DNA from: Octopus vulgaris
Taxonomy: Eukaryota
Length of the DNA stretch: 124,000 nucleotides
Direction of reading: 5' to 3'
NCBI GenBank assembly: GCA_951406725.2
Contig: OX597817.1
Span: forward strand, 117,944,001 to 118,068,000
In this document: positions 15,872-69,984 of the stretch, piece by piece
Layout: every line of letters starts with the position of its first letter
Numbering within the stretch: position 1 is the first letter of the stretch
Program-made: the position numbers and the translations under genes
Notes under the pieces: generated by a model
What the model was told of the DNA's origin: nothing
Database searches by the model: none
Seen by the model: only the letters and a program-made list of their open reading frames with translations

Positions 15872-16015
15872 TACATATATATATACGTATATATACATAT
15901 ATACGAGGGTCTTCTTTCAGTTTCCGTCTACTAAATCCACTCACAAGGCTTTGGTCAGCCCAAGGCTATAGCAAAAGACACCTACCCAAGTTGCCACGCA
16001 GTGGGACTGAACTCA
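15385..16015 (-). mobile_element. SINE family A copy with an extra inverted duplication of its middle segment
   Basis: Tail at 15385-15605 and middle at 15905-16015 are on minus; 15621-15700 is an inverted copy of 15905-15984 across the internal (TA)n. Confidence 0.8.
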
Positions 16016-16323
16016 GATAATATATGTATTATGCACTGAAGCGCGGGACTATTCAAGATGTAACGGATTACAACGAAACTAGACGAGCTTTTCATTTTAG
16101 GTGCAGCCTGACATACTGACGATAATTACGTCTCCAGCCAGAATTCGAAATCATGACCCAGGTATATCTGTTTCCTTAATTCTACGGCGATTTAGCTGAG
16201 AATATGTTAAATGCTACTCGTTTGCCCGATTTTTGTTGGTCCGTTACATATTTTCATTAAGATTAGTGGTTAAGATGGAGGATTTTACTTCTACTCTTTA
16301 GCAAGTTGGTCCTTCTTGTACCA

Positions 16324-21240: not shown

Positions 21241-22129
21241 TAATAACCTTATTCAGTAAATGTCACTGGAGTGGAAAGATCATAAAGAATAGTTATTATG
21301 AATGAAAAACAAAGACCCTGTGTTGTCTGCCGCGTTCTCCTCGATAAATTGATAATCTCCACTATTATATCGAATATTAATAGCACGCACACAGATATCA
21401 AATAAATAGAACCGATCCACTACTAAAGATTGCAGTTGCCAGAGAAATTGAAGACGGAAAACGAATAGTGTTTAATCGACAGATTGAACATCAGTTGACT
21501 GAAGAAGAAATTATAAGAGGAACTGGCTTATTGATATATGGATCAATTACATAAATCTTAGCATTTAAAGCCCACTAACTCTTGGATTTTGATAGCACTC
21601 AAATATATCAAAACTTCAAATGACATTGTTGGATTGTTACCTCTAAGTATGGGGAGAGAAAGAACCAAGAACTAACTAGAGGGGAACGCTTTTGAGTAAA
21701 TCAAATTGTGCTGGAGTATTTTGCTACGTTAGCATTATTTCTATACTTGCTATAGAACAGAGAAAAGTAGACTCTAGATATAGCCGTAGAAAATAACAGA
21801 AGATAGTCAACTGTTTACTAGTCATGCAGGTTTTAAAGTTATGTGGAAATATTATGAGGGAATTGGATATTCGTGACTATACTCTGAAAGTGTTGGAAAA
21901 TTACGTTAAAATAGAATTTAGAGTGTCTGTGAAATTAAGAGTATTGGGGACACTAATTTGTTGATCTGTAGGGATTGTAGTCAAAAGTGACGTAAAAACT
22001 CTTTAGAGTGGAGAAAAGATACGGGAGAATTGTAGAGAGTTTTGGTATACATTCATTATTCCATGAAGATGGAATAATGAATGAATAATTTAAGGAGGCA
22101 TTATTTGCGAACTGTAACGCGTGTACATT

Positions 22130-22265
22130 ATTTACATTATTTACAATTGACAGATATTTGTCCTCATCTTGTTTGTTGTTTCGGCTGATATACTCTCCAG
22201 CCTTCATCATGTGTCTTGGGGAAATTTTGAACCTGGGTTCTCATTCCTAAGGTATTTTTTCGATG
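22130..22265 (-). mobile_element. Hammerhead-containing body and tail of the 44489-44760 family (degraded)
   Basis: Minus strand reads GAATGAGAACCCAGGTTC...CCCAAGACAC-ATGATGA-AGGCTGGAGAGTATATCAGCC-GAAAC...GATGAGGACAAATATC. Confidence 0.75.
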
Positions 22266-22353
22266 TTGTTGTTGTTGTTGTTGTTATTATTATTGTTATT
22301 ATTATTATTATTATTGCTGTTGCTGTTGTAGTTATTATTATTATTATTATTAT

Positions 22354-22908
22354 TGAGTGAGAGAGCAGCGCATGCCATCAAAGTGACACTGGGGTAAAAT
22401 ATACGAAGCCCAATATACCCATCATGACTACCCGTCTGATAAAGGTACACCAGGCACATGCATCACAACCATATGTGCGCGACATGGTGATCTCATATCA
22501 AGATAAACAGCACATAACCTTGCAGGTGGGGCCCAGTTAGAATTTTCTTCAGGTTGAGTAGCCCATCCCGCTCAAAAGGTCCCTGAATAAGGGTTGTTTA
22601 AGGATGTTGAAAGAACCACCCATGTTTCCAGAGGTGAATTATTCAAACCCAAAAGAATCCCTCTCAACACATGGCTATGATGCTCCCCCACTACTTCTGC
22701 TCGTGATCAGAGATGCACATATCGTCAGCCACTAAGGGACATGCTCAACTGGTTAAAGTCAAACAACTGACAAGCAAATCTGTGGTATTGAGCAGAATAT
22801 TTGCTGTAGCCCATCTTTTATACCAAGACAAAACAATGTACATGATAACACTTCCAATCAGTTAAGATCAGAAGCCATGAGAGCCTCTGCCTGGTACTGC
22901 ATCAGGGC

Positions 22909-22909
<1 letters not shown>
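22354..22909. mobile_element. 556-bp non-coding element bounded by TG...CA and inserted in an (ATT)n tract (solo-LTR-like or unclassified)
   Basis: GC-richer unique block flanked by ATT repeats on both sides; TATAAAAG on the minus strand near 22820; no ORF of note. Confidence 0.55.
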
Positions 22910-22992
<83 letters not shown>

Positions 22993-23007
22993 CATTATTA
23001 TTATTGA

Positions 23008-23092
23008 GGTCAAGATGAGGACAAATATCCGTAAATTGTAAATAATGTAAATAATGTACATAATTCCTCATCTCTTAAATATTGAACTGTAG
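23008..23092 (+). repeat. Inverted tail copy of the 22130-22265 element
   Basis: CAAGATGAGGACAAATATCCGTAAATTGTAAATAATGTAAATAATGTACATAATTCCTCATCTCTTAAATATTGAAC is the opposite orientation of 22130-22175. Confidence 0.75.
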
Positions 23093-24300: not shown

Positions 24301-24396
24301 ACAAGAGCAACAACAGCAACAGCAGCAACAACAACAACAATCATAATAATTACTGGCTGGATCCGTGAAAAGTTCATGGAAAATATAAAATATATA

Positions 24397-24560
24397 GGCG
24401 TAGGAGTGGCTGTGTGGTAAGTAGCTCGCTTACCGACCACATGGTTCAGGGTTCAGTCCCACTACATGGCATCTTGGGCAAGTGTCTTCTACTATAGCCT
24501 CGGGCCGACCAAAGCCTTGTGAGTGGATTTGGTAGATGGAAACTAAAGAAGACCATCGTA

Positions 24561-24593
<33 letters not shown>

Positions 24594-24803
24594 GCGTGAG
24601 TATGTGTTTGTGATTCTGTGTTTGTCCTTCCAACATGGCTTGTCAACCGATGCTGGTGTGTTTACGTCCCCGTAACTTAGCGGTTCGGCAAAAGAGACCG
24701 ATAGATTAGGCTTACAAAGAATAAGCTCTGAAGTCGATTTGCTCGACTAATGGTGGTGTTCCAGCATGGCCACAGTCAAATGACTGAAACAAGTAAAAGA
24801 GTA
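24397..24803 (+). mobile_element. Full-length tRNA-derived SINE family A
   Basis: Head GTAGGAGTGGCTGTGTGGTAAG...GGGTTCAGTCCC (A/B-box-like), core GGCATCTTGGGCAAGT, internal (TA)n, tail CCAGCATGGCCACAGTCAAATGACTGAAACAAGTAAAAGAG. Confidence 0.9.
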
Positions 24804-24857
24804 TCTGTAAATTGTGTGCTGGTGCCATGAGAAATATTTCTATATTGTGACAGTTAA

Positions 24858-34483: not shown

Positions 34484-34904
34484 GTATGCATGTAACTATA
34501 TCGATATATATGTACCTACTTCCATACTAAATATTGGATATTGGATACAGTTTACTTAGATATTTCGTATCTGTTGACCATTTAAAATTTAACAGTATCT
34601 TCGATACTAGAAATTGTCATAACATATCTATAACTTTATATCTTTTATATCCAGCTTTTTTATAAAATTAATTGCATATTTCGAAATACTTGCGTAATAA
34701 ATTATTGTCTGTGTGTGCATCTATATATATATGTGTGTGTGTGTTTGAGTGGGAGTATGTATATACATGGCTGAGTGTTTGCCTGTCTATATATTTGTGC
34801 CTGCATGTGTACATAGGTTTAGCTATATATGCATTTATGTATATACATATGTACGTACGTATGTATGTGTGTATGTATGTCCCAGCTACATGGTTTCGTG
34901 TTTT

Positions 34905-35205
34905 GTCCCACTGTGGGACACCTTGGGCAATCGTCTTTTGGGGCAAGAACTTGTTCAGTGTATCTGGTAGACGGAAACTGGAAGAATCCCGCCATATATA
35001 TCTATATCTATATATATGTTTGTGTGGGTGTGTGTGTGTTTGTTCCTCACCACCGCTTGACAACCTGTGTTGGTGTGTTTACGTCCCCATGACTTAGCTG
35101 TTCCGTAAAGACACCAATAAAATAAGTACTAGGCTTAAAAATTCCTGCGATCCATTTGTTCGACCAATGCCCTTCTACTGGGCCGCAGTCAAATTACTGA
35201 AACAG
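34905..35205 (+). mobile_element. Degraded SINE family A
   Basis: GGACACCTTGGGCAA...GGTAGACGGAAACTG...GTGTTTACGTCCCC...GCAGTCAAATTACTGAAAC. Confidence 0.7.
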
Positions 35206-36376: not shown

Positions 36377-38044
36377 GGTGATTCAGCAGTTCAAACTTCC
36401 ATTTGCTAAGTGCATTATTTATTTGTACGCATTTGTGTTGTATGATGTAAAAACGTATCTATTATGAGATTTTTTTTAAATCTTTGAATGGTTGACGGAT
36501 CTTTATAGACTCTCCTCTACAAGTCAACAGGTATCATAATAAAATCTGTACATTATAATCTCAAGTGCTACACGCAAATTCATGAAAGTTTAGGAAATGC
36601 ATAAGAATACAAGACATTAAGAAAAAAATTGAATATATAATCACGTGAAACTTTTTGACATTTTTAACTGAACTCTGCCTGAATAAAAATGACTTATGGT
36701 TCTGTATATTTGACGCCAATATTTGTTTCGTTTTCATAATCTCTCTCTTACGCTCAGGTTTTTTTCTATCCTTTTACACACATTCTCTCTCACAAATGTG
36801 TCTATACTTTCAAGTATTTATGTTTCTGTCTATTTCCAGATATTTTGGCAGTTCTGCTTAATAGCAAATATATCTAGATATAATGTTGTGTTCGATTAAT
36901 CTTCTTTAATTTTAAAGTAATATAAAACTTACGTATTTTCGAATCAATGTTTACATATATGAATACAGTTTTATATATGTTTGTGTGTGCGTGGTTTCGT
37001 GTGATTTTGCTTGCTTTTAGAATTTTGTTATGTTTATATTTGCTTTCCAAACATATATTTGTACCATCCTCGTTATACCATTATATGTGAGAATTCATAA
37101 AGAGAAATAACTTTAGCTAGGAATTAGACATCATTGACAGTCTAGTGAGATTTAAATGCACACAAAAGTAAATTTGGACAACATTACGTTTTATGGGTGA
37201 CTAGAACTGGAGCCACTGGAACAAATAATCAAATTTTCTTTTATTGATATTGATTTTATTTTAATCTTCCAAACCACAAATATTTACACATAAATACGCT
37301 GGTTGTAACTCCAAGTTCAAAGGAATATTGAATTTTTAGTCCTGTATCATAAAAAAATGTTTAACAGAAAGAAATCATTTAAGTAGATTCACAAATATTT
37401 TAAATCAGTAAATTAAATTTTATTTTGGCGATATATACAATGGTTCGTAGTTTCTATTTAGTCCTGGAGATCTGCATTATTTAGGATTGTTCACATATTT
37501 CCGCGTAGTTCTACATTTATATTACTAAGTTTCAGAATTTCCTCCACTTCTGCAATTTTATCGACGTAAAAGTATTCGACTTCACTTCTAGATTTATCTG
37601 CAATATCTTATATACTTCGCAGGTAATACTAAAATCTAAAAACATTTTTAAAATTTAGTATCCATAAAATTTCCTAGATATGGGGAGCGCAAATATAATC
37701 AGATATGTCGGAATTTGATGTTCTTCCATTGTTGTCAGATGCTCGTAAGCAAATAAATGTAAACCTTAACTGCAACGAATATAATAATGGTAAGAAATTT
37801 AGTATACGTTAGAAGAATAAATATATATTTTTTAAGACATCATATGTCGTGTACTTTGTATCCAAAATATGTTTGTCTTAAGAGAAGTAAATTAATTCAC
37901 ATTCATACGCACAACATATAACGTCTCTAAAGTTTTGTTCAAATGACGCATAATTTCAAATTTTCCATCTCATTTCATTGGTGTAGACAGAAATACGCAT
38001 TTATGCATATACAAGTACACACAAATTATATATATATATATATA

Positions 38045-38435
38045 TAGGCGTAGGAGTGGCTGAATACCAACCACATGATTCCGGGTTCAGTCTCACTGCA
38101 TAGCACCTTGGGCAAGTGTATTCTACTATTGCATCGGGCCGACCAAAGCCTTGTGAGTGGATTTGGTAGAGGGAAACTGAAAGAAGCCCGTCATATATAT
38201 ATATATATATATATACGTGTGTGTATATACGTGTGTGTATATGCTTGTGTGTCTGTGTTTGTCCCCCAAACATCGCTTAACAACCGATGGTGGTGTGTTT
38301 ACGTCTCCGTAACTTAGCGGCTCGGCAAAGAGACCGATACAATAGGTACTAGAGTTACAAAGAATAAGTTTTGGGGTATATTTGCTCGACTAAAGGCGGT
38401 GCTCGAGCATGGCCACAGTCAATTGACTGAAACAA
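38045..38435 (+). mobile_element. Full-length SINE family A
   Basis: Same head, core and tail as 24397-24803. Confidence 0.9.
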
Positions 38436-39696
38436 ATATTGCCACACATATAGGCACACACATAAACAAAATGTATATGTGTTTATGTGTCTATGCATTT
38501 GCGTGTGCGTGTATGAGAGCCTGGGTAGAGGGTTGGCTATCGGTTTATGACGATGAGGATGTTGTTGTTCGATTAAACTACCATTGAAATAAAGTATAGA
38601 TACTTGAATGTTTCATACATATACATGTATCGTTCACGTACTCCACGAACAAAGGATGCTTCTCATGTGGGTTGCTGATGTATTTCATTCATACCAATTC
38701 ATCTTCATTACTGGAAATTCTATATACTATTTTAAATATAAAATCTCTTTTCTCTTTCAGATTCGAGAACTCGACTGCATGTTAGTGGATTATGTCGCCG
38801 AAAATCAACGTAGCATACGTCCAAGAAGAGCACGAGGGCACGAGTTAGCAATCCACCATTTCAACATATTCACACAGTATACCTACCACCTGACAATCCT
38901 CGACGTCCTACTTGTGGCTGTCACAAACAACATCTCACTTTCTGCCGCTGTTACATACTAGGTTTTAATATTAAAAGACCGGTCAGTTTCACATAACTGC
39001 TTCCAACTAAACTGATTTCTTACCTCGCCCCAACCCGCCCCGCATTACACCCCCAACGTATTACATCATGCCTAGAAATACATCTCGGAAACTACGTACA
39101 TCTATTCATCTATATAAACTGAACATCGCACACACACGTACACTCTAGTGTGGTTACCACTTGCGGGACTACTAACTTCAGAAACACACGCGCTAACAGA
39201 CATTTTGAGGCAAACAGAACGCCAGCTGATGCCATCAAACAGATCTCTAGATATCACTTGCGCGTCAATTTTCAAGCATCTTTTTTCCACCTCTTTAATT
39301 TTCTCTGTCCTCTGTACTCTGTGTAAGTTTGACCTATTGAGATCAATTTCAATATATGTATACTTAAAAATTCATCAGCTGGAAATCTTCACATTTTGCT
39401 TTCTCACATTTTGCATGTATACATATATACATATTTTGTAATTTATACGCAAACTATGATATTAAATATATTTAATGTGTCCAATTTTTTTAATCCTCAT
39501 AATTGCATAATTGTCTCTATTCCCGCTCAACCTGATCCGTCTTATAGCCTTTCTGTACCTTGTGAATTCGATCCCATATGAAAACATCAATGTTGGAATC
39601 TTCTGAGTACTACGGAGTGTCTCTGACTCTCATCTATTGACTAAATATATGCACACGCACGCGCACACATACATACATACATACAGACACACACAG

Positions 39697-42558: not shown

Positions 42559-42633
<75 letters not shown>

Positions 42634-42636
<3 letters not shown>

Positions 42637-43119
42637 TAATATTAAGGGATCAGCAAAAGAAATGCATCACCACATACCGAAGTTCAGAAATAGCAGCCAA
42701 AATCTAAGCCATTTCTTCTACTTAAAAAAAGGTCTACTAGAGAAACCATAATACTTGAATCTTATTCATCCAGGCAAAGGGTATCGTAAAGAAAATCAAT
42801 CAATATCCGATTATCCATAGACGCGCGTTTCGGAATTAAGTTTTAAATAAAGAATATCCAAAAATATAAACTTTACTAACCACATTCCTTCTCAGTATGG
42901 ATTTTCTGCAATAATCCGAAGGTACTAAAACATTAGAACGACTCCTACATTGAAGGAGTTTATATTTTTGGATATTCCTTATTTAAAACCTAATTCCGAA
43001 ACGCGCGTCTATGGATAATCGGATATTGATTGATTTTCGTTACGATACCCTTTTGGCTGCTATTTCTGAACTTCGGTATGTGGTGATGCATTTCTTTTGC
43101 TGATCCCTTAATATTAGTA
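42634..43119. repeat. Divergent inverted repeat with a near-perfect hammerhead in the left arm
   Basis: 42634-~42700 plus 42779-42870 mirror 42958-43119; HHR at 42813-42902 on minus. Confidence 0.8.
42813..42902 (-). ncRNA. Type I hammerhead ribozyme motif with one core lesion
   Basis: ATCCATA-CTGAGAA-GGAAT...ATTCC-GAAA-CGCGCG-TC-TATGGAT: 7-bp perfect helix I, 5-bp helix II, palindrome ACGCGCGT, GUC triplet. Confidence 0.75.
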
Positions 43120-43215
43120 TTACTAGAATTTACCGTATAACGGTCCTGTTTTCATACCGAATTCTACTTGGGAAATTTATTGATTACTTCGTAATTAATT
43201 AGTTTTACTCTTAAT

Positions 43216-44270: not shown

Positions 44271-44284
44271 TTTTTTCATTTTAT

Positions 44285-44327
44285 CTAGTTTCAGCTCACG
44301 AGCTGTGGCCATGCTGGGGCACCGCCA
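44285..44327 (-). mobile_element. Extreme 3' end of the CR1-like LINE family seen at 83821-85797
   Basis: GGCGGTGCCCCAGCATGGCCACAGCTCGTGAGCTGAAACTAG matches 85757-85797. Confidence 0.7.
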
Positions 44328-44419
44328 TTTATATATATCAAGTGTCGAACAGAAAGAACTCAACAAGGAGAAAACTAGAAACTTGATGAAATTTTAACGG
44401 GCAAGAATTTTTGACAAAG

Positions 44420-44560
44420 ACACGATAATTGAGTTCTAGATTTAAGAGATGAGGAATTATGTATATTATGTACGTTATTTACAATTGATGGGTATATGGC
44501 GTAGTGGTTAAGAGCGCGGGCTACTAACCGCAAGATTCCGAGTTCGATTCCAGGTAGTGA

Positions 44561-44608
<48 letters not shown>

Positions 44609-44765
44609 CAACAACAACAACACCATCGAAAAAACCTTAGGAATGAGAACCCAGGTTCGAAATTACCCCAAGATACCTGATGAAGGCTTGATGGTATATC
44701 AGCCGAAACGTTTGTTAACAAATAAATGAGTGCAAATATCGCAATTGTAAATAGCGTAAATAAAG
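44420..44765 (+). mobile_element. Composite element: inverted tail copy, tRNA-derived head, (AAT)n(AAC)n, hammerhead-containing PLE-like body and tail
   Basis: Inverted tail 44420-44487; A box TGGCGTAGTGG 44497-44507; B box GTTCGATTCC 44542-44551; CTGATGA 44677-44683, helix II GGC-T-TGAT..ATCA-GCC, GAAAC 44705-44709, then GTT. Confidence 0.8.
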
Positions 44766-46589
44766 ACACGATAGACAGAATATTCGCAGCTGAGTCTTCT
44801 TTGTCAGTCAATGACAAAAAAATATCATAGTGATTTCACGTCGTTACCATTGAGAACTCCCAGTTTTGCAGCGCCGGTGTTATTATTAAACTACTGGAAA
44901 AGGCTAGCGATTGTATACTAAACCAGAAACAAACAAGTCATAACATAAATGTAACAGACATAGAATTATACATATATAACAGTACGAAGCCTTACAGCTA
45001 TATACAACTGTAGAGAAATAATAATAATCATACATATATCGCAAATACAACAGAAAGAACTTTGCAGCTATCGAACGAACTTTGTAGGGTTGCGTAAAGA
45101 TGAAATGGAGTAAGCCCTAGAGGACGTAGCAGAAACCCAGACCAGCAAAGCGCAGTTTGGTCAAAGGCAGGGCGAAAAAGAACAACACTGCCTTCGCCGG
45201 ACACCTGTCACGTGGTATGGAAGAGGTAGCGTTGCGACGGGGAAAGAGGTGGCGGCAGAGAGGGAACGAAGGACCAGAGGGGTTAGAGAAACAGAGAGAG
45301 AAGTAAAAGGTACAAGGAAGGCAAGCAAGGGTGGAGAATAAGTTAAAGTAAGAGTAGAGGGGGAAAGAGATAGAGTAAGAGGGAAAGAGGGCGAGACAGA
45401 GAGAGAGAGAAAACGAAAAATAAGCGTTGAGACAGGGAAAGATGGGACAGCAGAGAGAGAACAAGGGAGCAGAAGGATTAGAGAAACAGAGGGAGAAGAG
45501 AAGGGTACAAGGGAGGCAAACAAGGGTAGAAAGAGAATAAAGTTGGAGAAACAGATAGAGTAATAGTATAGGTGGTATGTATGTATGTATGTATATGAAT
45601 GTAGGTAGGTAGTAGGTAGGTAGGTAGGTAGGTAGGTAGGTAGATAGGTACGTAGGTACGTAGGTAGGTAGTAGATAGGTAGGTAGGCAGGTAGGTAGTT
45701 AGCTAGGTAGGTTGGTACGTTGGTTGGTAGGTTGTTAGGTATGTAAGCTGTACCCTTTCCATCTGACTCAGAAAAAAGCATTACTAACCTAGTTGTAGCA
45801 CGAAAGGAAGGAAGGAAGGAAGGAAGGAAGGAAGGAAGGAAGGAAGGAAAGCACTTTAAGGTGTCATCCATTAAGACAGAAAACGAAAATTAAAGTCTGT
45901 CTTCAACAAAATCTTCAATCGTAAATGCAGAGTAAGAGAAACTGATCTTGGAATAAGTCGCAGTGGAGGTGGTGTCATGTAGAGGAATTGTGTATGAGAG
46001 AGAGAAATATACTATTCTATTCATGCATTCGATCTTTTCAAATTCTAGTAAATTCTCATACGTTTCATACAATTTATTGGTATACTTCTAACATGATATT
46101 TGTGACAACTCCACAGTGATAGTCATTCAGATTAAAGGCAGTATTCGGAATTGATCGAGTTTAATAGTAGCTTCTGTAGATATATTACTGTAGTTTCAAC
46201 AAATTAGATTATTTCAAATCAGATATGATTAATTTATCGATTCTCTTCAGGCTTCGAAACAAACTCCACGTTTATAAACAGAGATATATAGATGGCACAG
46301 ACAGTAAAAAGTTGAAATACATGCTGAACTGTTTGATGTTTCTGACGATGTGGTAGTATATGGTCGACACTAAAATATTGAATAAAGGCAATCTTAGCAC
46401 ATGTAAATACCTATCATGGTAAGAACAAGAGAGAAATGCAAAATAAACTCCTATATGATTGTGTACTGTATCTATAAAAAAAGCATGAATATCTCTGAAC
46501 GCAAGTAAAATGGAGCAAATATATGTAGATGATATTTCTCATTTAAATGGAAATGCTTTTACAGTTATACATATTTTGTCATACATAAG

Positions 46590-51960: not shown

Positions 51961-53509
51961 TCAATATCAGTACAAAGTGTCAATGTATTTAGATACTAAT
52001 TTTCTGGCGCAAATGAATGACAGAATCTTCCGATGACATTTTGTAAGCCTTCTAGGAACTTATCTTTAGGGGTGAAATTTTAGAGAACGGGCAAGAGGGG
52101 ACTCAACTAAATATATATAATTGCGAAGTGGGGGTAATGAACTGAATAATGGGTTAAGAACGTCGTTCGGTTCACCAATCCTACAAGGGACAATCTGATT
52201 AGCTTACGCAGTTTCCATACAGATTCCGTTCGCCAACATTATTTACATTCATTAGGTTGACACAATCTATGACAGAAGACATTTTCCCAATTTGCCGCGA
52301 CGAAATCATGAACCCATACTGCAAATCAAATATATTAAATACAATAACAAACCTATTCCCATTATAAATGGTTAAGAAGAATATCCATTCATTATGTTAA
52401 ATTAACGATTTTAGGTATAATAAACATTTGAATTTTACAAGCCAGTTTCAGGGTCATAGAGAAAATGTTCTCATATGTTCGTTATATATATATATAAATC
52501 TATTGAATTATGCATTGTAAACTATATGATGACATAATGAATGTTTAATTTTTAGATGAAATAACGAGACACTTGAAGACAACAAGACGCTGGAGCCAGC
52601 GATCACAAATCTCCATAGTTGCTCGACCGGCATTCATTGGAGATGCATATTTTGTTTTGAAAATCTCATTTTCGAACTGTTTTCAATAAAGAAGAGATGG
52701 TTCAGGATGTTGTATTCTTGAATACAGTTAACCCAGTAAATTGAAACAGAAACCAACTACAGTTCCTCAATAAAAAAGCACATATGACTACATTGTTAAA
52801 AGGTCCGCTTCACTCATATTGCTTCAGGTTCAATTCTAGTGCGTTGCACTTTGAGCAAGTACGAGCATATGTACAAGTCGCGTCAACGAATATTTTGCGG
52901 TCGAATCTGGTAAACGCTAACGGTGCGCAAAAATATTATATGTGAAAATATGTGTATATATGCATTTATGTTAGTATGTTGCTTAACTGCCGTATTTCTA
53001 GTGTCAGAATATTTCCTTCAATTTTGTCCTATTTGTACTCCTACAACTAAACGCACTTTTGTAATAAATGCATCCGCTTTGCTATTGCTTCGTATGCTTA
53101 CTTTATCCTCACCATCACAACTGTCATAATCATCATTCCCACATTTATCATTGACATCATCACAATCATCTCTATTATCTTCAACTCAATTTCTGTCCTT
53201 ATTGTTTCTTCCACCATCAGAGTTATTCCATTCTTAGCAGTAACATCACAATTATCATTGTCACCATTATCGTCTCTACAGTCACTATACCTGCCTTTAC
53301 TTACTTAACTGCCCATAACTATATAACGACTACTTTTATAAATCAGTTCTTGATATGTTCTCGTACGGATGACGATGAGCTTTGTTTGATCGGTGTTTTA
53401 ATAACACAAAAAACATATTTTCAATGAATCATATGCTAATTTATACATACAGAACGATAAATGGATAGAAACAAACACACACACACATATACATGTACTA
53501 ATATATATA

Positions 53510-53925
53510 TACTCTTTACTCTTTACTCTTTTACTTGTTTCAGTCATTTGGCTGCGTCCATGCTGGAGCACCGCCTTTAGTCGATCAAATCGACCCCGGA
53601 ACTTATTCTTTGTAAGCCCAGTACTTATTCTATCGGTCTCTTTTGCCGAACCGCTAAGTGACGGGGACATAAACACACCAGCATCGGTTGTCAAGCAATG
53701 CTAGGTGGACAAACACAGACACCCCCCCCACACAAATACACACACATATATATATATACATATATACGACAGGCTTCTTCCAGTTTCCGTCTACCAAATC
53801 CACTCACAAGGCATTGGTCGGCCCGGGGCTATAGCACAAGACACTTGCCCAAGGTGGCACGCAGTGGGACCGAACCCGGAACCATGTGGTTGGTTAGCAA
53901 GCTACTAACCACACAGCCACTCCTG
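53510..53925 (-). mobile_element. Full-length SINE family A
   Basis: Reverse complement of the 24397-24803 family, including the (CTCTTTTA) tail repeats. Confidence 0.9.
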
Positions 53926-55140
53926 TACGTATATATACGTACGCACATTGATAAATACGTACACACATATCTACACACGTACACATTTATACTTCCGATA
54001 TTTTACCACAACACAAAAGTTAACGAGTAAAATATCTTTAAGGAATTACGCACACGCTGCTATCGCTGCTTGTCAACATATGCAACACTTAAGAAGACAT
54101 CGGAAATGAAATTGTGTGTTTCCCAGCAATCAGCTTCTGTGTCGCTCATCTGCAATTTTCTGAAGCAAAGAAACACACCAACAAAAGAACACTTCCAAGA
54201 TGTCAGCATTATCTCATCTTGATTCCTTTAGATGTAAGCGATAGTAACGTGTTATTAAACACACATACTTAAAATATACGCTTCGTGTATTTTCCCGTGA
54301 ATTCAATACCCTGGTGGAGTATATACACTCTCAATGCACCCGAGTCATGGACAGGCGAGGTAATTCGCCTTCAACCCCATAGGAAAGGGATGAACATCCA
54401 TGTTTTTGTCATTTTTGTGGCTTAGCAACATCACGTATCCCCCAGGAAAGAAAGCAAGACACCTAGGCAGTCCACGACTTACAGGCTCGTGGCTTGTAAA
54501 ACCATGTTCTGGCATGCCGGAAATTGCGTGTTTTGCGATATTATCATCCTAGAGCTGCTTTTATTTCATAGGTAACAAAATAATTCTCAAGATTTGAATC
54601 TGACTGAGCAGAGATGTGAAGACCATGTCAATGCAATCTTACCAAAACAACAAGTATTTTATAAATGTTTTGACGTCAGGTGGTACTTAACACATATTCT
54701 TGAGGGTGACTAAAGCAAGAAAAAATAATGAAGAAGATAGAGACGTATCAATGGCTTCCTGTCGGCTTAACAGAGATAAATGAAATGTTACAATTAAGAT
54801 ATACATAATCTTCCCCTACATTCAGCTGCTCCGGCATTGTTGTCTGCAAAACATTGAAATATCGGTTACATATATAAAAAAATCAACGACACGGAAATGT
54901 ACTTCGGTTTCAAAACACATTAATGATAATTATCCCTTTTGAAATATTTTCTTCAGAGATCTAAACAGAAATCAGTTAATTGAATATGCACATACACTCA
55001 TTTTCTCGGGCTTATACAGCTGGACGTAATTGATGATACTCTCATAATCTTTGTGTAATAAAGAGAAATACATGAAGCAATAAATATATAAATATTTTGC
55101 ATTCTCTCTCAAATGCTTCGTTCAGAGTTTCCACATAACC

Positions 55141-56984: not shown

Positions 56985-57150
56985 TGAAGCAGTGGTGGGA
57001 TACCGCCTTGAAAATTTTTTAATCGGGTGTATCGCCCCCAATAAGTACAGCTTTTAAAGCCAGGTATATCGGCTCACTTTGCTGAATCGCTAAGTTACTG
57101 AGACGTAAACATACAAGCACCGGATCTGAAGCGGTCGCGGGGACCAAATA
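56985..57150 (-). mobile_element. SINE family A tail fragment immediately left of the Helitron
   Basis: ACCGCCTTG...TATCGG...CGCTAAGTTAC...GACGTAAACA matches the family tail. Confidence 0.6.
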
Positions 57151-57175
57151 TTAACACAAATACACATACACATAC

Positions 57176-57275
<100 letters not shown>

Positions 57276-57396: not shown

Positions 57397-60300
57397 TCAC
57401 TGGAATACTTCTGTATATACGATGTTCCTAGCTGTCCGTTTGGGCGAAAACATGAAAACATCATTGCGCCTCCCAACGCGTGAACAGCCCACGTAGAGTT
57501 GACCGTGGGCGAAGCACTGTTCGCCCAAATGTAACCCAGCGACTTGTAGCGTTTGGCCTTGGGATTTATTGATGGACATTGCGAAGCAGAGTTTAACAGG
57601 AAACTGAGAACGCCTGAAGTGGATTGGTAGGTCAGCGCCCGACGGTTGAAGGTGCATCCGTGGAATGAAGACGTCCTCTCCCTTCCCACAACCGGTAAGT
57701 ATTGTGGCCGTTATTAAATGTGGTGCCAAATGTTTCACAACCAAACGTGTGCCGTTGCACTGTTTAGGTGGAACCAAATTCCTGATGAGCATAATGGGCG
57801 CACCGACTTTTAACTTCAGGATGTGTGGTGGCAGGCATGGCGGTTCAAGTGAATTCAGGAATTCAACAGGATAATCGGCAAGCTGGGCGGGGTCTGCTGT
57901 CCTATCTATAGATTTGTAGACGTGGACATCACCAGGAATAGCTTCAAGTAGCTGGATATTGATGGAGTTGACGGTTGTATTTTTGGGTGCGAGAATAGCT
58001 CTGCCTGCCAGCCATTTTAGGTCGCGTAAATTGTTTTGTAGGTCGTGGAAGACAGCGTCCCGGAGGCTAGCAGGGGTGTTGACAATGGTGCAAAGTGAGT
58101 CCAATTGAACGTAGCCATCCGCATCAGACAGCATCCTATTTTCACCGAGCGATAAGAGGTCCCTGGAGAATGCAGCGGATCCGCTGTCACCAATTAACTG
58201 CGCGCGCATGTTAGTTTGGAGGTGCAAGGGCCGCACATGTGCCCAAAGAGCTGACGACTTAAGGCACGCGCGCACGGGTTCCTTTTGGAATAACAGGTAG
58301 AGTCTACCTGAAGTCTCCTGAAAGAAGTAAAGTTAATCCTCCCATGGGGGCCGTAGAGTCTCTGATGTCTTGCAGGGACCTGTCCAGTGCCTCAAGGGCG
58401 CTTTTGTGTGCCATAGTGCACTCGTCCCATACGATGAGTTTGCATCTGCGCAGAATGTCGGCCTGTTCTGAGTTCTTGGCGATGTTGCAGATAGGTGACT
58501 CGGACTTTGCCAGATCGAGCGGGAGTCTGAAGGCAGAGTGGGCGGTTCTGCCACCCGGAAGCAACGTGGCCGCGATACCAGAGGAAGCTACAGCCAGGGC
58601 AATGTCCGTGTTGCGTCTGACCTCTGCCAGAATTAGTTTAGTGACGAAGGTTTTGCCAGTGCCGCCGGGTGCATCAAGGAAGAAAATCCCCCCACGTTGC
58701 TGTCTGACAGAGTCTACGATGGTGTTATAGGCTATGCGCTGGTCTGGAAGCAGCCGTGGTTCATTATCTTGGACGTACTGGTGCAGTTCCTCAATGCAGT
58801 AGGAAGTTTCGCGTAACAATTCAGCAGACATAACATTGGCGTGTTCACGTGTGGGTGGTGGAAGGCCGTACTCTGTTAAAGCAGACCCACCCATATCGAT
58901 GACAGCGTCTTCGAGTTGAATGAGCGCAAAATTGTAAAAATTGTAAAAATTGTAAAAGTTGGTGAACGTGATCTCGGCGGAAGGGCAGTGTTGCTGAGCC
59001 GTACGTAAGAAGTCGTGCGACATGTCATCCCTGTATTTCATCCAGAGACTTAGTGGATCACTAAGCTGACATTTTTGAAGAAGGATTGCGAAAAGATGTC
59101 GTAGGGCCGAATGCGTTTGCAGTAAAGCACCCTCTGCCATCGTGGCGTCCCACTGGGAGTCATCCTCTAGAAGGCCAAGTCTCATACATGCTTCCCTGAA
59201 GGTGTCGCACAGAACCCCATTGACGGTATGTATATTGGCGAAACCTGTTGGACCAGTGACCTCATGTAGAAGGAGACGGAGGTAGAAGCATTCTTGCTGG
59301 TTTGGCGGGATGTTGTAAACTCGATCCAGGCAGGAGTCAAACTTGACGCCTGGGAAGCTTTCGACGTTTTTGCCGGATTTCCGTCGAACCCAGGTGTTTT
59401 TAGACCACACGAAGTACGATGGGACCTGTGGGTACAAAAGCGTTCGAGCGAAGTCATCACGTTGGCATAATTTGAAGAAACCAGTCAACGTTGTGTCTTT
59501 AGGGCTGGTGGCTATCTGCACAGCACTTTGCTCTGTGAAGTAAATCCGCTGTCCATTTTCCAAGTGTACAGCAAGCTGCACCACAGCCGGGTGTCTCTGA
59601 TGGAGCGGGAAGCCGTAAATGCGCCAAAACGCTTCGTTGCTGCTGAGGTACCGGCCAGCCAAGTAGTTGGACACTTCGTCGCGACTGGTGGTCCTCTGGA
59701 TGCTGAACATGGCAGCATCGCTGCCTTTGTTGATATATTTGCAGACATATTGTATTGGCCTGATGGAGCTGCAGAACTCAACGTTGACGTGGGCTTTGAA
59801 TATCTTCGACAGGAGAGGACAGTAGGGGACAATGTAGCTGTTGTCCACTTGATGTCGCCCAACCGTAATCGTGCGGCCTCCATTGGCTGGACTCCTTCGT
59901 TTGTACAGCGGATACCCATCGCCGCCTGTTTGAGTCTCCAAAGTGAACCGTTTAGGGAATCCCTTTGAGCAGGCTAATCCGTTTTTGTAGCATGGTGTGT
60001 TGGCGTAATTTGGTCCACAGGGCCCGTGTACCATGGTAGTGCGGACAATTTCGTAGAGTCCGGGGTCCTCATCGGGGTCAGGAATCTCGGCGGAAATGAA
60101 TTTGTCAATGTCATTAGTCTCGATTTTATGAGTGAGCCAAATTAAGATGTGAGCATGTGGCAAGCCCCTCTTTTGCCACTCGACCGAAAACATGTGGCAC
60201 CTGACGTGCCCGAAAATCTGACCCTTAACTATCAAATCCTTCATTTTGCCCAAATTCAGACGGAAAACCCTAGCAACGATGTCGTGTCGATGGGTGTGAG

Positions 60301-62272
60301 ATTGACCCGGGAGGAGTTCGCGAGTGATTTCGTCGCAGCTGGGATTGCACGTGTAGGTGATAAAGAGGTCCGGCCGGCCGTAAATGCGCACGTAGGTCAA
60401 GGCGTCTTGGGTCCTTTCACGCATATATCGCGGTCCTCCCGTGAAGGTGGAGGGTAGAATGCATGGCTTGCCGATGTTGCGAGGGTCATTTTCTTGTTGC
60501 AAACCGTCACGGAGATGAATGTAGGAGTCGGAGCGAAGTTTGGTCTGATTAAGTTTAATGTATAGCAGCCTTTCCGATTCCATTTTTGCGGCCATGTCGA
60601 CGGCGAACTGGTTGAATAGCTGACGACAACGGGGCAATAAGTTGAACTCACCCTCCCTGACCATGAACCGGTATGAGTAGAACGCCCTGCAGGAAACCGT
60701 CTTTGATGCCGCAGTAGTTTGATTGGAGGGCTGCCGTAAAGGAATTCCGAAGTGGTAGCCGTCTTCCCCATAAGGGAAAAGCAATGGATACTGAAGCGCG
60801 TCATAAGATCTGTGAGTCTCGCTGATCCTGTGTAGGTTGTTACCACGGGAGGAGATGATTATGTCACGGCTGTTGTGTTGCTCTCCGTGTATAACTGCGG
60901 CAATTTCGTTGCACGCAGGTGCGTTGAAACGGCGTTCGTGCTCCCCGTGGGGTCGTTTATCAGCATCAATGACAACGGTGAAGTTTGGAGATGGAGCACT
61001 GTCCAAGGCATATCTGAAGCTGCAGACGTAGCTGTTGATATCATGAAGCATGGTTTGGAGACGGAGAAGAATGTCTTTGCGAGGAACATAGCTTGTACCC
61101 GGTATTATTCCAAGGCGTGCATCAACCTGGTGGTTGTAGTCGGCAATGAAGTATATTTGGAGGAAAGAAGACTGCTGAATCTCGTCTGGCAGAAGTGACC
61201 CAATAAGATGGTAGACCTGTCCCTGCACTTTGAAAGTAGGCATCCAGCCTTCTCTGGGAGGAATTTTGGCCCCGAAAGAGGTCATTTGGAATGAGCAGTT
61301 GTACTTTCGAATTATTTCAAGGAATTGTGACGAATCGGGGGTTAAACCCGCCGCGAGATCCTTCAGTGGTTGAGGTGGTTCCCGTAGGGGTGGCAGGTCC
61401 ACTTTGCCACCAGAGCAGCACAAACCAGGTGGCTCTCCGGCCCATTTCTTGGCTTTGCAAAACTGGCATACAATTGTCATTGACCCTATCTTGATGTCGT
61501 CACGCAAGGAGAAGTTAATTGTGGCGTCGTAGTTGAATGCTAGTGACAACCAGAAAGCGGGGGCAGGGGTACGTACACCACGAATGATATCCCGACGTTT
61601 GTTGATACTCTCAAGTCGAGTGCACCGTGCCTCAGCAGATTCAGATGCACGTGCGACAGCGGTAGCAGTGGCATCCCTTGAAAGCCTTTCAGCTCTCGCC
61701 TCAGCACCCTCTGAAGCCCTAGCAGAAGCAGTGTTAATGGCATGTCTGGATGTCCGAATAGTCCGTTGGTGTGGAGTTTCGGCAGATCGAGCCCTGGCTG
61801 TGTTTGCGGCGTTAGCAGCTTGGCGAGCTCTCCTCTGTTGAGGTGTTTCGGCAGCTTTGGCCATGGCTTTGTTTGCGGCGTCAGCATCTTGGCGAGTTCT
61901 CCTCTGCTGTGAGGTTTCGACAGATCGTGTCCTGGCAAAGCTAGTGGCGTTAGCCGCATTCCGAATGGCCCTTTGTTCGGGGTTCTCGCGAGCTCTGCGG
62001 ATGGACGCACAGTAAGAAGCCCGCATGTTTTCGCTGGACTGTTGCTCTTTCGTCAACCTCGAGCGGAGGGAAGATCTGTACGCTGCGACCCTTGCAAGTC
62101 GGGTAGAACGGTCGCTAGTAGTTTCAGATGCCTGAGCAGCGGCATAACGGGAAGCTGTTTGCGAGAGGCGCAAGGCGGTTTCCTCGTGGGTCTCGCGTGC
62201 CCTTCTAGCCCTATCAGCCGATGCCTTGGCCGTCCGAGGGCTGAGGAGGGTCCTTCTCTTCTTGGGTGGCAT
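57397..62272 (-). pseudogene. Helitron Rep/helicase (RepHel) ORF, ~1628 aa if repaired, interrupted by TAG at 58304-58306 and a frameshift near 58271
   Basis: Likely start MPPKKRR (ATG 62272); 23-aa repeats; CQFC..CC Zn motif; Rep motifs RPDLFITYTCNP, VEWQKRGLPHAHILIW, YVCKYINKG; Pif1 motifs DAPGGTGKT, IVWDE, GDFR, RRSQFP, FAMSINKSQGQT, HGQLYVGCSRV. Confidence 0.95.
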
Positions 62273-62393
62273 TTTGGTGGATAGCAATGTGTTTGGCAAA
62301 GGTGTAATAAAAAGGAACACGTGGGGTAAGTATTTTGGTGGATAGCAATGTGTTTGGTAAAGGTGTAATAAAAAGGAGCTCGTGGGGTAAGTA
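62272..62393. repeat. 61-bp tandem duplication directly upstream of the Helitron start codon
   Basis: 62272-62332 vs 62333-62393, three differences. Confidence 0.9.
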
Positions 62394-63416
62394 TCCGAAA
62401 ATGTATAAAAATGTACAAAAACGGCCAAAAAGCTGGCAGCAATGTGAGTGACAACAACGAAAAAGTCAAAAGTGATCAAACTGAACAAACGAAAGGAAAA
62501 GTTTTTTGATGCACACGACAAAAGTGGTTTATAATAAACCAAGAGTTTGCAAGTAGCGTCCGAGGACCGTTAGGGTACGTCAAAAATTGAAGGTAAAACG
62601 TTTGGGGTGGTAGTTATAAAGAAAGTTTAAACCAAAAAAGTATTCGAATAACTTGCGGCTGCAGCAGCTATTAGCAGAAGTGGCGGTGTTGGGGGTAAAG
62701 TCTCGAATGTAATTTCTTCCTGGTAGGAATTGGTTGGATCGAATTATCGATAGCTAAAAAGGTCAAGTTGCGTCCCCTAGACAGTCTGGTTTGTGTTTAA
62801 TACACAAATTTGTTTGCTATGTGTGCCACATATGATTAAATTAACCGATTTTTTCCAATAATGTATCCTATTGGAATAAAAAGGGCTATATAGCTCCTTG
62901 GAGCAGACATGATGCTCGTTGTGAAAAAAAAAAAAGATTCCTGCCAATTTGTGAAAGATATTGTCGAAAATATGTCATCTTGAATTTGAACGCGATTTCT
63001 CAAAATTGCATGATTTTATCGATTGTTTCTGATGGTAAGGTATTGCATGGAAAACTAACGTCAGAATTGAGTTTCTTAGGGTAACATTAAGCTTCACCAT
63101 GAGTTTGGTGAAAATGATTGCAAGTTGTGAAAACTACCATAGATAATGCGTTGCATAAAAAAAGCTTAGATTCTCGAGTTGCGTCCCCTAGACAATCTGT
63201 GGTTCATGTTTATGATTCTCGACCCCATGTCGAATTTATCAATTTTTTCAGAACTGGGGGAACTTTTCAAAATTTTCGCTGCGTTAGTTTTGAATTATGA
63301 CATTGGGCTATGTGTGTGTCAAGTTTCATCAGAATCGGTTGAAAGCCGTGGTCAGGGTGAGGGTACGAGAAAACAGACACACAGAAGCACGCACAGACAA
63401 CCTGCCGTTTATATAT

Positions 63417-69627: not shown

Positions 69628-69984
69628 TATGTATAGAAATAATCAGTATATGACTTAACTTATTCCATAAAGTTTGATAAATTCATTCAAATTTAGAGAA
69701 TGAAGCAGATTCAATGTCAAAATGGAATTTAGTCTTTGTCTTCATATTCCTCTGCAATTGTTTCTTACAAATAGACCAAGATATTCATAGATAGAACATC
69801 GGAGTGAGCAAACTTGCATTCTTCTGTAGGTAATATTTAAAGGAAAATAACAAGATGTTTAAAATATATATAGATTGTTTTTTCTTAGTTATAGTTTAAG
69901 AGGATTTATATATTCATTATTTCAGTCACGTTTATTTTAATCTAGACTAAAATATAATAGGAATTGGGTGCTAATATATCTATG

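What the first reader, a model, noticed from the sequence alone, without database searches (positions are those of the whole stretch)
44420..44765. tRNA-headed SINE with a hammerhead and a Penelope-style inverted tail: a candidate PLE-mobilised SINE
Seen: a Pol III head (A box 44497-44507, B box 44542-44551, tRNA-like arms) is followed by (AAT)n(AAC)n, an HHR core (CTGATGA-A-GGC..GCC-GAAAC-GTT) and a tail. An inverted copy of the family tail lies directly upstream of the head (44420-44487). A second copy at 22130-23092 shows the same geometry: body and tail on minus, inverted tail on plus at 23008-23092. That copy preserves AAGACAC before the core, which would pair with a GTGTT helix I strand. 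Established: inverted partial terminal repeats and HHRs are hallmarks of PLE integration, whereas SINEs normally borrow LINE tails; Schistosoma Sm-alpha is a known tRNA-SINE with an HHR. Inference: this family is a Pol III-transcribed non-autonomous element retrotransposed by PLE RT/GIY-YIG machinery, which is an unusual SINE-partner relationship.
Basis: partly seen in the sequence, partly recalled or inferred. Interest (0 to 1): 0.8.

Follow-up and report, generated by a model that had tools for sequence, protein, structure and literature searches.

The report
SINE-like retroelement with Penelope-type insertion scars
Two copies of a short non-coding mobile element carry the insertion scars typical of Penelope-like retrotransposons rather than of LINEs, and the one full-length copy starts with a tRNA-like RNA polymerase III promoter, so it may be a true SINE that uses Penelope enzymes; two copies cannot prove that.

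Summary
The element at 44428-44761 is one insertion flanked by a perfect 12-bp target-site duplication (TSD). It consists of a 60-nt inverted arm, a 77-nt tRNA-like head with strict A and B boxes, (AAT)13(AAC)6, a body, a hammerhead-like box and a tail. A second copy on the minus strand (22117-23083, 8-bp TSD) has the same 3' module and a 73-nt inverted arm.

In both copies the arm is a 5'-truncated inverted copy of the element's own 3' end, and it runs 23-38 nt past the point where the direct copy ends. Published work treats this combination as the signature of Penelope-like element (PLE) integration. An abundant LINE-type tRNA-SINE in the same window shows no such arms in the three full-length copies checked.

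The hammerhead is a relic. Copy 1 matches the PLE "minimal hammerhead" descriptor except for helix I, copy 2 has lost C3 and the cleavage site, and Rfam finds nothing.

The head occurs once. Copy 2 keeps only ACCTC, which matches the last 5 nt of the head, in front of (AAT)n, so it may be 5'-truncated inside the head.

No PLE gene lies in the window and no further copies could be fetched. PLE-type integration is well supported. Pol III SINE status is plausible but unproven.

The parts
44416..44427 (.). Copy 1, left target-site duplication AAAGACACGATA
   Evidence: the repeat finder. A 12-mer shared between two boundary windows occurs at 0.3% of random site pairs.
44428..44465 (-). Copy 1, 38-nt extension (PLE-style 'tail') at the outer end of the inverted arm. 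The direct 3' end of this copy lacks it.
   Evidence: Alignment A1. It matches the arm of copy 2 at 23034-23088, 91% over 55 nt.
44466..44487 (-). Copy 1, inner part of the inverted arm. It is the reverse complement of the direct tail at 44742-44763.
   Evidence: inverted repeat I1: 22 nt, 91% complementary.
44488..44564 (+). tRNA-like head. The tRNA-like +1 is at 44490, the A box at 44497-44507 and the B box at 44542-44551. The head ends in ACCTG.
   Evidence: Sequence. The strict A/B pattern occurs once, with 0 expected. ARAGORN and Rfam do not call it. It is unique in the window.
44565..44621 (+). Internal microsatellite (AAT)13(AAC)6, shared with copy 2
44622..44676 (+). Body, including a second B-box-like motif GGTTCGAAATTACC at 44654-44667
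   Evidence: 82% identical to copy 2
44677..44712 (+). Minimal-hammerhead-like relic: CTGATGA, an extra A, helix II (GGCT, bulged T, GATG, loop GTA, TATC, AGCC), GAAAC, GTT
   Evidence: Descriptor match is expected 0.007 times per window. Helix II forms in local folds. Helix I has 0 bp, and Rfam gives no hit.
44713..44761 (+). Copy 1, direct tail ending in two 9-mer repeats (GTAAATAGC, GTAAAT...). It stops 38 nt short of the end represented in the arm.
44762..44773 (.). Copy 1, right target-site duplication AAAGACACGATA
22109..22116 (.). Copy 2, target-site duplication GAACTGTA on the 3' side of the minus-strand element
   Evidence: Sequence. A shared 8-mer occurs at 1.3% of random site pairs.
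22117..22269 (-). Copy 2, direct tail and body with a decayed core (ATGATGA, and no GT after GAAAC)
22270..22354 (-). Copy 2, (AAT)n/(AAC)n microsatellite directly 5' of the body
22355..22909 (-). Unique unit of about 555 bp (called the '540-bp unit' in the report text) lying inside the (AAT)n array. Most likely a later insertion, not part of the family.
   Evidence: Single copy in the window. Four TTTT runs on the sense strand.
22910..23005 (-). Copy 2, distal part of the (AAT)n array
23006..23010 (-). ACCTC between the arm and (AAT)n. It is probably the last 5 nt of the head (ACCTG in copy 1), which would place the 5' truncation of copy 2 inside the head.
   Evidence: 4 of 5 nt identical, p about 0.011-0.016; 6 of 7 if the preceding TG is counted.
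23011..23083 (+). Copy 2, inverted arm. 50 nt (23011-23060) mirror the copy's own direct tail at 96%, and 23 nt (23061-23083) are the extension.
   Evidence: inverted repeat I1; alignment
23084..23091 (.). Copy 2, target-site duplication GAACTGTA. Its first 5 nt also match the end of the extension in copy 1, so microhomology at priming is possible.

Best explanation
Family A is a short non-coding retroelement. Its 3' module (a decayed minimal hammerhead followed by an AT-rich tail of about 90 nt) is of Penelope-like-element type, and its copies were integrated by PLE RT/GIY-YIG machinery supplied in trans.

Proposed mechanism:
1. A source copy is transcribed by RNA polymerase III from the A and B boxes of the tRNA-like head. 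The transcript runs through a T4-free unit of about 310 nt.
2. The PLE protein binds the 3' module and cuts both target strands 8-12 bp apart.
3. The bottom strand primes cDNA from an internal start site in the 9-mer repeats. This cDNA becomes the direct copy, full-length in copy 1 and 5'-truncated inside the head in copy 2.
4. The top strand primes a second cDNA from a start site 23-38 nt further 3'. It aborts after 60-73 nt and becomes the inverted arm with its extension.
5. Host repair joins the two cDNAs, leaving a TSD around the whole unit.

Shown here: the architecture (TSDs, arms, extension, head at the exact 5' end, hammerhead-like relic).
Inferred: Pol III transcription, the identity of the enzyme, and that the head belongs to the family master. 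The hammerhead is probably vestigial or serves only as a structural or protein-binding element.
For: - TSDs bracket arm plus direct copy in both insertions: 12/12 and 8/8 nt. Chance rates are 0.3% and 1.3%.
- Each arm reproduces the 3' end of its own copy (96% and 91%), although the two copies are only 82% alike. Arm and direct copy therefore came from one template in one event.
- The arms are truncated at different points (22 and 50 nt of overlap), and both run 23-38 nt past the direct 3' end. Craig et al. 2021 describe an adjacent inverted 5'-truncated copy and a 30-40 bp 'tail' at only one end as PLE-specific and not seen in LINE target-primed reverse transcription. Frangieh et al. 2024 show that a PLE protein cleaves and extends both strands, and that reverse transcription starts at two internal sites whose spacing is the tail.
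[quoted passage not shown] It is expected 0.007 times per window by chance. It lies 49 nt from the direct end and 87 nt from the extended end. By my arithmetic from the figures quoted, the comparable distance in the anole PLE is about 85-92 nt.
- The direct copy of copy 1 starts 2 nt before the tRNA-like +1, and the A/B boxes are not expected by chance.
- Copy 2 keeps ACCTC in front of (AAT)n.
- The sense strand has no TTTT in 312 nt and 240 nt, while the antisense strand has them. The background rate of such windows is 13%.
- Three full-length copies of the abundant LINE-type SINE (family B) in the same window show no inverted tail arms.
- The best named relatives of the window's transposon proteins are octopod. 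Octopus genomes hold abundant and recently active Penelope elements.
Against: - There are only two copies, and the head is present in one. The 5-nt remnant in copy 2 is weak evidence.
- No autonomous PLE, RT of PLE type or GIY-YIG domain turned up among the 40 longer ORFs scanned in the window. No PLE sharing the tail could be sought.
- The hammerhead lacks helix I, copy 2 lacks C3 and the GU site, Rfam gives no hit, and the fold is not thermodynamically unusual (z = 0.1).
- The tail ends in short 9-mer repeats, a style also seen in LINE-dependent SINE tails, for example family B's (AAAGAGTA)n.
- There is no tandem or pseudo-LTR arrangement.
- The T4-free argument is weak (p about 0.13).
Confidence: 0.5

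Rival explanations
1. The integration is PLE-type as above, but the family master has no Pol III head. It is a non-autonomous PLE derivative (a pseudo-LTR fragment or retrozyme-like unit) that begins at or near the (AAT)n array. The tRNA-like head of copy 1 is then either a separate small tRNA-SINE with an (AAT)n tail that landed at the arm/(AAT)n boundary, or a template-switch chimera made during reverse transcription.
For: - The head is unique in the window and is absent from copy 2.
- The (AAT)n array of copy 2 has accepted another insertion, the 540-bp unit, so the array is a target or a switch point.
- PLEs favour microsatellite targets.
- Non-autonomous PLE derivatives and retrozymes are already described.
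Against: - No (AAT) units lie to the left of the head, so an insertion into the array would have had to hit its very edge.
- The head sits exactly at the 5' end of the direct copy.
- The junction TGACCT[G/C]-(AAT)n is shared by both copies.
- No second copy of a 'head plus (AAT)n' SINE exists in 124 kb.
Confidence: 0.3
2. An ordinary LINE-mobilised tRNA-SINE. Its tail of 9-mer repeats is recognised by a CR1-, L2- or RTE-type LINE, and the inverted arms come from twin priming or another repair artefact.
For: - The tail ends in short tandem 9-mers, as in stringent-type LINE and SINE 3' ends. Family B ends in (AAAGAGTA)n.
- LINE RT remnants are present in the window.
- The element has TSDs and 5' truncation.
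Against: - From established knowledge of L1 twin priming, that process inverts the upstream part of the RNA. It does not produce a duplicate of the extreme 3' end, and it does not extend past the direct 3' end.
- The extension is conserved between the two arms (91%).
- Two of two family A copies have arms, against none of the three full-length family B copies checked.
- The tail matches neither LINE 3' region in the window. No BLAST hit falls near 4.9-5.0 kb or 85.7-86.3 kb.
Confidence: 0.1
3. This is not a retroelement signature at all. The inverted arms would be terminal inverted repeats of a DNA transposon or foldback element, or products of local rearrangement, and the head and hammerhead resemblances would be chance.
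For: - The window is rich in DNA transposons and inverted structures. It holds a Helitron and Tc1/mariner fragments, a perfect 70-bp inverted repeat at 42633-43120 and a rearranged family B copy at 15.4-16.0 kb.
- Rfam and ARAGORN do not recognise either RNA motif.
Against: - True terminal inverted repeats would be complementary at the extreme ends. Here the outer 23-38 nt of the left end have no partner at the right end.
- The arm lengths differ between copies.
- The TSDs differ in length (12 and 8 bp).
- The A/B boxes and the minimal-hammerhead descriptor are each far above chance expectation.
Confidence: 0.05

Closest known systems
Penelope-like elements (Penelope/Poseidon, Neptune and related clades) and their non-autonomous derivatives
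   Same: An inverted 5'-truncated copy lies directly upstream. A 23-38 nt 'tail' extension is present at one end only. The element has TSDs. A minimal type-I hammerhead-like motif lies a few tens of nt upstream of the 3' terminus. There is no poly(A) tail.
   Different: The element has no ORF and no tandem or pseudo-LTR arrangement. It is only about 335 bp long and has a tRNA-like Pol III head at the 5' end. The hammerhead lacks helix I. The autonomous partner is unknown.
Metazoan non-LTR retrozymes (Cervera and de la Pena)
   Same: Both are short, non-coding and hammerhead-bearing. Retrozymes have been proposed to be mobilised by PLEs and have been called a possible new type of SINE.
   Different: Retrozymes are tandem arrays with an active type-I hammerhead in every unit and give circular RNAs. 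Here the copies are single and dispersed, have TSDs and inverted arms, carry a decayed hammerhead and have a Pol III head.
Schistosoma SMalpha / Sjalpha SINE-like elements
   Same: Both are short interspersed elements carrying a hammerhead motif. From my own knowledge, SMalpha also has Pol III-type A and B boxes.
   Different: SMalpha carries a canonical, active type-I hammerhead and also occurs in tandem (satellite) form. I know of no reported PLE-style inverted arm or tail extension for it. There is no sequence similarity.
LINE-dependent tRNA-SINEs, such as family B in this window (38032-38445 and other sites)
   Same: Both have a tRNA-like head with A and B boxes, an internal microsatellite, a unique body, a short-repeat tail, TSDs and 5' truncation.
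   Different: The three full-length family B copies checked have no inverted 3'-end arm and no extension. The family A tail matches no LINE in the window.

Membership tests
PLE-mobilised (non-autonomous) element | [quoted passage not shown] | tested here: met
   Both copies show it: 22 nt at 91% and 50 nt at 96% complementarity to the copy's own 3' end, with different truncation points.
PLE-mobilised (non-autonomous) element | A 30-40 bp 'tail' extension is present at only one end of the insertion | tested here: met
   Extensions of 38 nt (44428-44465) and 23-28 nt (23061-23083/88) occur on the arm only. They are 91% alike between the copies. Definition taken.
PLE-mobilised (non-autonomous) element | The 3' end is shared with an autonomous PLE of the same genome (RT plus GIY-YIG) | not testable with these tools
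   No PLE ORF was found in the window.
PLE-mobilised (non-autonomous) element | Partial tandem (pseudo-LTR) arrangement | tested here: not met
   Both insertions hold a single direct unit. This arrangement is frequent in PLEs but is not shown by every copy.
Hammerhead ribozyme (type I / PLE minimal hammerhead) | Conserved core: CUGANGA, GAAA and a cleavage triplet (N-U-H, where H is any base but G), with ACGU palindromic | tested here: inconclusive
   Copy 1 has all of these (44677-44712). Copy 2 has AUGAUGA and no GU. The ancestral state is unknown.
Hammerhead ribozyme (type I / PLE minimal hammerhead) | Helix II closed by G10.1-C11.1, with an extra nucleotide after A9 | tested here: met
   The GGCU...AGCC stem forms in local folds of both copies.
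Hammerhead ribozyme (type I / PLE minimal hammerhead) | Helix I (4-6 bp) between the sequence 5' of the core and the sequence 3' of the cleavage site | tested here: not met
   0 contiguous pairs. No complementary stretch was found downstream by inspection.
Hammerhead ribozyme (type I / PLE minimal hammerhead) | Match to the Rfam hammerhead covariance models | tested here: not met
   No hit at E<=10.
tRNA-derived SINE | An internal Pol III promoter (A and B boxes) in a tRNA-related 5' head | tested here: met
   Strict boxes lie 34 nt apart, with 0 expected by chance. The cloverleaf is degenerate, and ARAGORN and Rfam are negative.
tRNA-derived SINE | The head is a constant part of a multi-copy family | tested here: inconclusive
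   One of two copies has the head. Copy 2 retains only ACCTC (p about 0.011-0.016).
tRNA-derived SINE | The 3' tail is derived from, or recognised by, a partner LINE | tested here: not met
   There is no similarity to the two LINE 3' regions in the window, and the architecture points to a PLE instead. This covers only two LINEs, so it is not exhaustive.
Non-LTR retrozyme | Tandem repeats, each with an intact type-I hammerhead, giving circular RNA | tested here: not met
   The units are single and dispersed, and the hammerhead is decayed. Circular RNA is not testable here.
L1-type twin-priming inversion | The inverted segment derives from RNA upstream of the direct segment, with little or no duplication of the 3' end | tested here: not met
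   The arm duplicates the extreme 3' end and extends beyond it. The definition comes from established knowledge of L1 twin priming.

The most novel reading that the evidence does not exclude
Family A is a bona fide Pol III-transcribed, tRNA-derived SINE whose retrotransposition partner is a Penelope-like element rather than a LINE. It would be the first clear SINE-PLE partnership. Its 3' module would be borrowed from the PLE pseudo-LTR/ORF junction (hammerhead plus RT start sites), and its insertions would record PLE two-strand priming in a unit only about 335 bp long.
Probability: 0.45. Interest if true: 0.7.

Novelty: new variant of a known kind. Interest (0 to 1): 0.55.

Why it matters
SINEs are defined by their dependence on LINE machinery. 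The papers I could search propose PLE dependence only for headless, tandem, hammerhead-bearing retrozymes, and four full-text searches found no tRNA-headed SINE tied to a PLE.

A Pol III SINE that borrows the PLE terminal module would show that PLE enzymes can be parasitised in the same way as LINE enzymes.

It would also give a substrate of about 335 nt that contains everything needed for PLE recognition. That would suit the in vitro PLE integration system described for mapping the RNA determinants, the two RT start sites and the origin of the inverted arm.

Finally, it would mean that some of the many 'unclassified SINEs' reported in octopus genomes may be assigned to the wrong partner.

If the head turns out to be a one-off fusion, the element is simply one more non-autonomous PLE derivative.

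Tried and rejected
Searches for more copies, all empty:
- Translating ORFs through the element and searching the 5.8-billion-protein collection gave 0 hits.
- A gapped body/core pattern (the conserved 19-mer, a 20-40 nt gap, then TGATGAAGGC) in IMG/VR viral contigs gave 0 hits.
- The 19-mer alone in JGI metagenomes gave 3 hits, all chance matches without flanking similarity.
- Contigs carrying the closest Helitron relatives (ENA, L004 and L005) hold no copy and share no other DNA with the window.

Identifying the organism: the Helitron's best hits are 52-64% identical and come from many phyla, including O. bimaculoides at 59%. The best named hit to the LINE RT is Argonauta hians at 59%. The source is therefore probably an octopod, but the species is not in the databases.

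Looking for a PLE in the window: Pfam scans of 40 ORFs found a Helitron, two LINE RT remnants and Tc1/mariner helix-turn-helix domains, with no GIY-YIG domain and no PLE-like RT.

RNA tools: Rfam and ARAGORN gave nothing for the head or the hammerhead. Folding energies of the head and the body are unremarkable.

Ideas considered and dropped:
- That the 540-bp unit of copy 2 is an alternative head. It is single-copy, contains four T4 terminators, and shares only a 12-mer with copy 1.
- A canonical hammerhead with the hairpin CGUUUGUU/AAUAAAUG as helix III. Positions 16.1 and 17 would be A and G, not U and H.

Two papers (Ferbeyre 1998 and Lunse 2017) were not held in the library.

Full report
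**What is there**

The window is AT-rich (34% GC) eukaryotic DNA full of microsatellites and transposons. At the reported site the sequence reads, from left to right:
- a 12-bp direct repeat, AAAGACACGATA (44416-44427);
- a 60-nt segment (44428-44487);
- a 77-nt tRNA-like segment (44488-44564);
- (AAT)13(AAC)6 (44565-44621);
- a unique body (44622-44676);
- the box CTGATGA-A-GGCTTGATGGTATATCAGCC-GAAAC-GTT (44677-44712);
- an AT-rich tail (44713-44761);
- the same 12-mer again (44762-44773).

A 12-mer shared between two such boundary windows occurs at 0.3% of random site pairs in this window. The whole 334-bp unit, upstream segment included, is therefore one insertion with a target-site duplication (TSD).

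BLAST of the parts against the window finds exactly one more copy of the body and tail, at 22129-22269 on the minus strand (82% identity). It finds one more copy of the upstream segment, at 23034-23088 (91%). It finds no second copy of the tRNA-like head.

**The inverted arms**

In copy 1 the inner 22 nt of the upstream segment (44466-44487) are the reverse complement of the direct tail (44742-44763, 91%). In copy 2 the corresponding repeat is 50 nt long and 96% complementary (22122-22171 against 23011-23060).

Three points matter.
- Each arm is much closer to the direct tail of its own copy (96% and 91%) than the two copies are to each other (82%). Arm and direct copy were therefore made from the same template in the same event.
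- The arms stop at different internal points, after 22 and 50 nt of overlap. They are 5'-truncated inverted copies, not fixed terminal repeats.
- Both arms continue outward beyond the point where the direct copy ends. The extra stretch is 38 nt in copy 1 (44428-44465) and 23-28 nt in copy 2 (23061-23083/88). This stretch (…TAATTCCTCATCTCTTAAAT…) is conserved between the copies.

Copy 2 is also bracketed by a direct repeat, GAACTGTA (22109-22116 and 23084-23091; chance rate 1.3%). Its first five bases coincide with the end of the extension seen in copy 1, which suggests priming at a microhomology.

**Comparison with published PLE biology**

Craig et al. [quoted passage not shown] They describe these as not observed in LINE target-primed reverse transcription.

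Frangieh et al. 2024 reconstituted integration with a PLE protein from the green anole. They found that it cleaves and extends both target strands. They also found that reverse transcription starts at two adjacent internal sites of the RNA, and that the tail is the sequence between those sites.

The two insertions here fit that scheme. One strand was primed from the internal site and gave the direct copy. The other strand was primed from the distal site and aborted early, which gave the arm with its extension.

From established knowledge, L1-type twin priming inverts the upstream part of the RNA and does not duplicate or overshoot the 3' end, so it does not explain these structures.

An internal control is available in the window. 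An abundant tRNA-SINE of about 400 bp (family B; 38032-38445, 24383-24812, 53505-53936 and other sites) has an internal (TA)n(TG)n array and an (AAAGAGTA)n tail. The three full-length copies checked show no inverted tail arm. The arms are therefore a property of family A and not of this genome's SINEs in general.

**The hammerhead**

Cervera and de la Pena 2014 describe the 'minimal' hammerheads of metazoan PLEs. [quoted passage not shown]

Copy 1 meets every one of these except helix I. A descriptor with all features but helix I hits once in the window against 0.007 expected. The bare box pair is expected 0.15 times. Helix II forms in local folds of both copies.

Against an active ribozyme:
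- Helix I has no pairs next to the core.
- Copy 2 reads ATGATGA and has no GT after GAAAC, because of a 6-nt indel.
- Rfam's hammerhead models give nothing at E<=10.
- The region folds no better than shuffled sequence.

I read the motif as a decayed PLE-type minimal hammerhead. Its position fits this reading. It lies 49 nt from the direct end and 87 nt from the extended end. From the coordinates quoted I calculate about 85-92 nt between the hammerhead cut site and the RT start sites in the anole PLE.

In that system, hammerhead mutants did not affect insertion in vitro. A dead hammerhead therefore does not argue against mobility.

**The tRNA-like head**

The A box (TGGCGTAGTGG) and the B box (GTTCGATTCC) are exact and 34 nt apart. 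The strict pattern was never produced in 150 simulated windows. The cloverleaf is degenerate, and neither ARAGORN nor Rfam calls it, which is usual for SINE heads.

Evidence that the head belongs to the family:
- The direct copy of copy 1 starts 2 nt before the tRNA-like +1, at the junction with the arm. This is the position expected for the 5' end of a full-length Pol III transcript.
- In copy 2 the 5 nt between the arm and the (AAT)n array are ACCTC, against ACCTG for the last 5 nt of the head (p about 0.011-0.016; 6 of 7 identical with the preceding TG). Copy 2 is then a copy truncated just inside the head.
- The sense strand is free of TTTT over 312 nt in copy 1 and 240 nt in copy 2, while the antisense strand is not. 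Only 13% of windows of that length share this property, so the support is weak.

Evidence against: the head occurs once in 124 kb.

The 540-bp unit that interrupts the (AAT)n array of copy 2 is single-copy and has four T4 runs. I treat it as a later insertion. It also shows that this array attracts insertions, which keeps alive the rival in which the head of copy 1 is a secondary arrival or a template-switch chimera.

**What could not be tested**

No PLE-type RT or GIY-YIG domain is encoded by the 40 longer ORFs of the window that I scanned. These give a Helitron with an intact 1412-aa Rep/helicase ORF, two LINE RT remnants and Tc1/mariner fragments. The family A tail matches neither LINE 3' region.

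Every attempt to fetch more copies failed. The source organism is not in the reachable collections. The best named relatives of its transposon proteins are Argonauta hians and Octopus bimaculoides at 59% identity, so it is probably an octopod.

Octopus genomes are reported to hold abundant and recently active Penelope elements and hundreds of unclassified SINE families. A PLE partner is therefore plausible, but that is context, not evidence.

**Verdict**

- That family A was integrated by PLE-type machinery: about 0.8.
- That its master copy is a Pol III tRNA-headed SINE: about 0.5-0.6, given PLE-type integration.
- That the hammerhead is currently active: low.

Non-autonomous, hammerhead-bearing, presumably PLE-dependent elements are already in the literature (retrozymes; SMalpha). 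My searches found no report of a tRNA-headed SINE with PLE insertion scars. I rate it a new variant of a known kind, of moderate interest. A simple genome-wide census of copies would decide it.

Noticed in passing
57397-62569 (minus strand): A Helitron with an uninterrupted 1412-aa ORF carrying Helitron_like_N, PIF1 helicase and STPR repeat domains, followed by a Pif1 2B-domain ORF. It may be a young or active copy. The best database relatives are only 52-64% identical and are spread over arthropods, flatworms, molluscs and a frog.
   Followed up: partly
38032-38445, 24383-24812, 53505-53936 (-), 115143-115345, 116098-116380, 34882-35204, 57051-57225: Family B, the dominant SINE of the window. 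It is about 400 bp long, with a tRNA-like head, an internal (TA)n(TG)n array and an (AAAGAGTA)n tail. The three full-length copies checked have no inverted arms. I used it as the internal control.
   Followed up: partly
15385-16017: A rearranged family B copy. The reverse-complemented 3' half, a forward 5'-middle piece and a reverse-complemented 5'-middle piece are arranged around the internal microsatellite, giving a foldback-like structure of unknown origin.
   Followed up: no
83953-85722 (+) and 5024-6079 (-): Two frame-shifted LINE reverse-transcriptase remnants (RVT_1; CR1/L2-like motifs). The best named relative is from Argonauta hians (59%). A 52-nt piece of the 3' UTR of the first LINE also lies at 44279-44330, just upstream of copy 1.
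   Followed up: partly
67604-67634 (minus strand): A solitary stretch of about 30 nt (TATTTACACTATTTACATTATTTACATTTGAC) resembling the family A tail repeats, with no body next to it. It is either an extremely 5'-truncated copy or a chance minisatellite.
   Followed up: no
44485-44496 and 22406-22417 (inside the 540-bp unit of copy 2): The 12-mer TGATGGGTATAT spans the arm/head junction of copy 1 and also occurs 69 nt from the end of the 540-bp unit, which likewise abuts (AAT)n. 8 of 300 shuffles reach this alignment score. Unexplained.
   Followed up: partly
42633-42702 and 43051-43120: A perfect 70-bp inverted repeat with the arms about 350 bp apart. It is probably a MITE or a foldback element.
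   Followed up: no
44654-44667: The family A body holds a second B-box-like motif (GGTTCGAAATTACC) in a context that looks like a tRNA T-arm (GAACCCAGGTTCGAAAT). Part of the body may itself derive from a tRNA.
   Followed up: no
68769-69572, 86765-87184, 98291-98737: Tc1/mariner transposase helix-turn-helix fragments. The segments 68537-69634 and 86523-87712 are 77-79% identical copies of one element.
   Followed up: no
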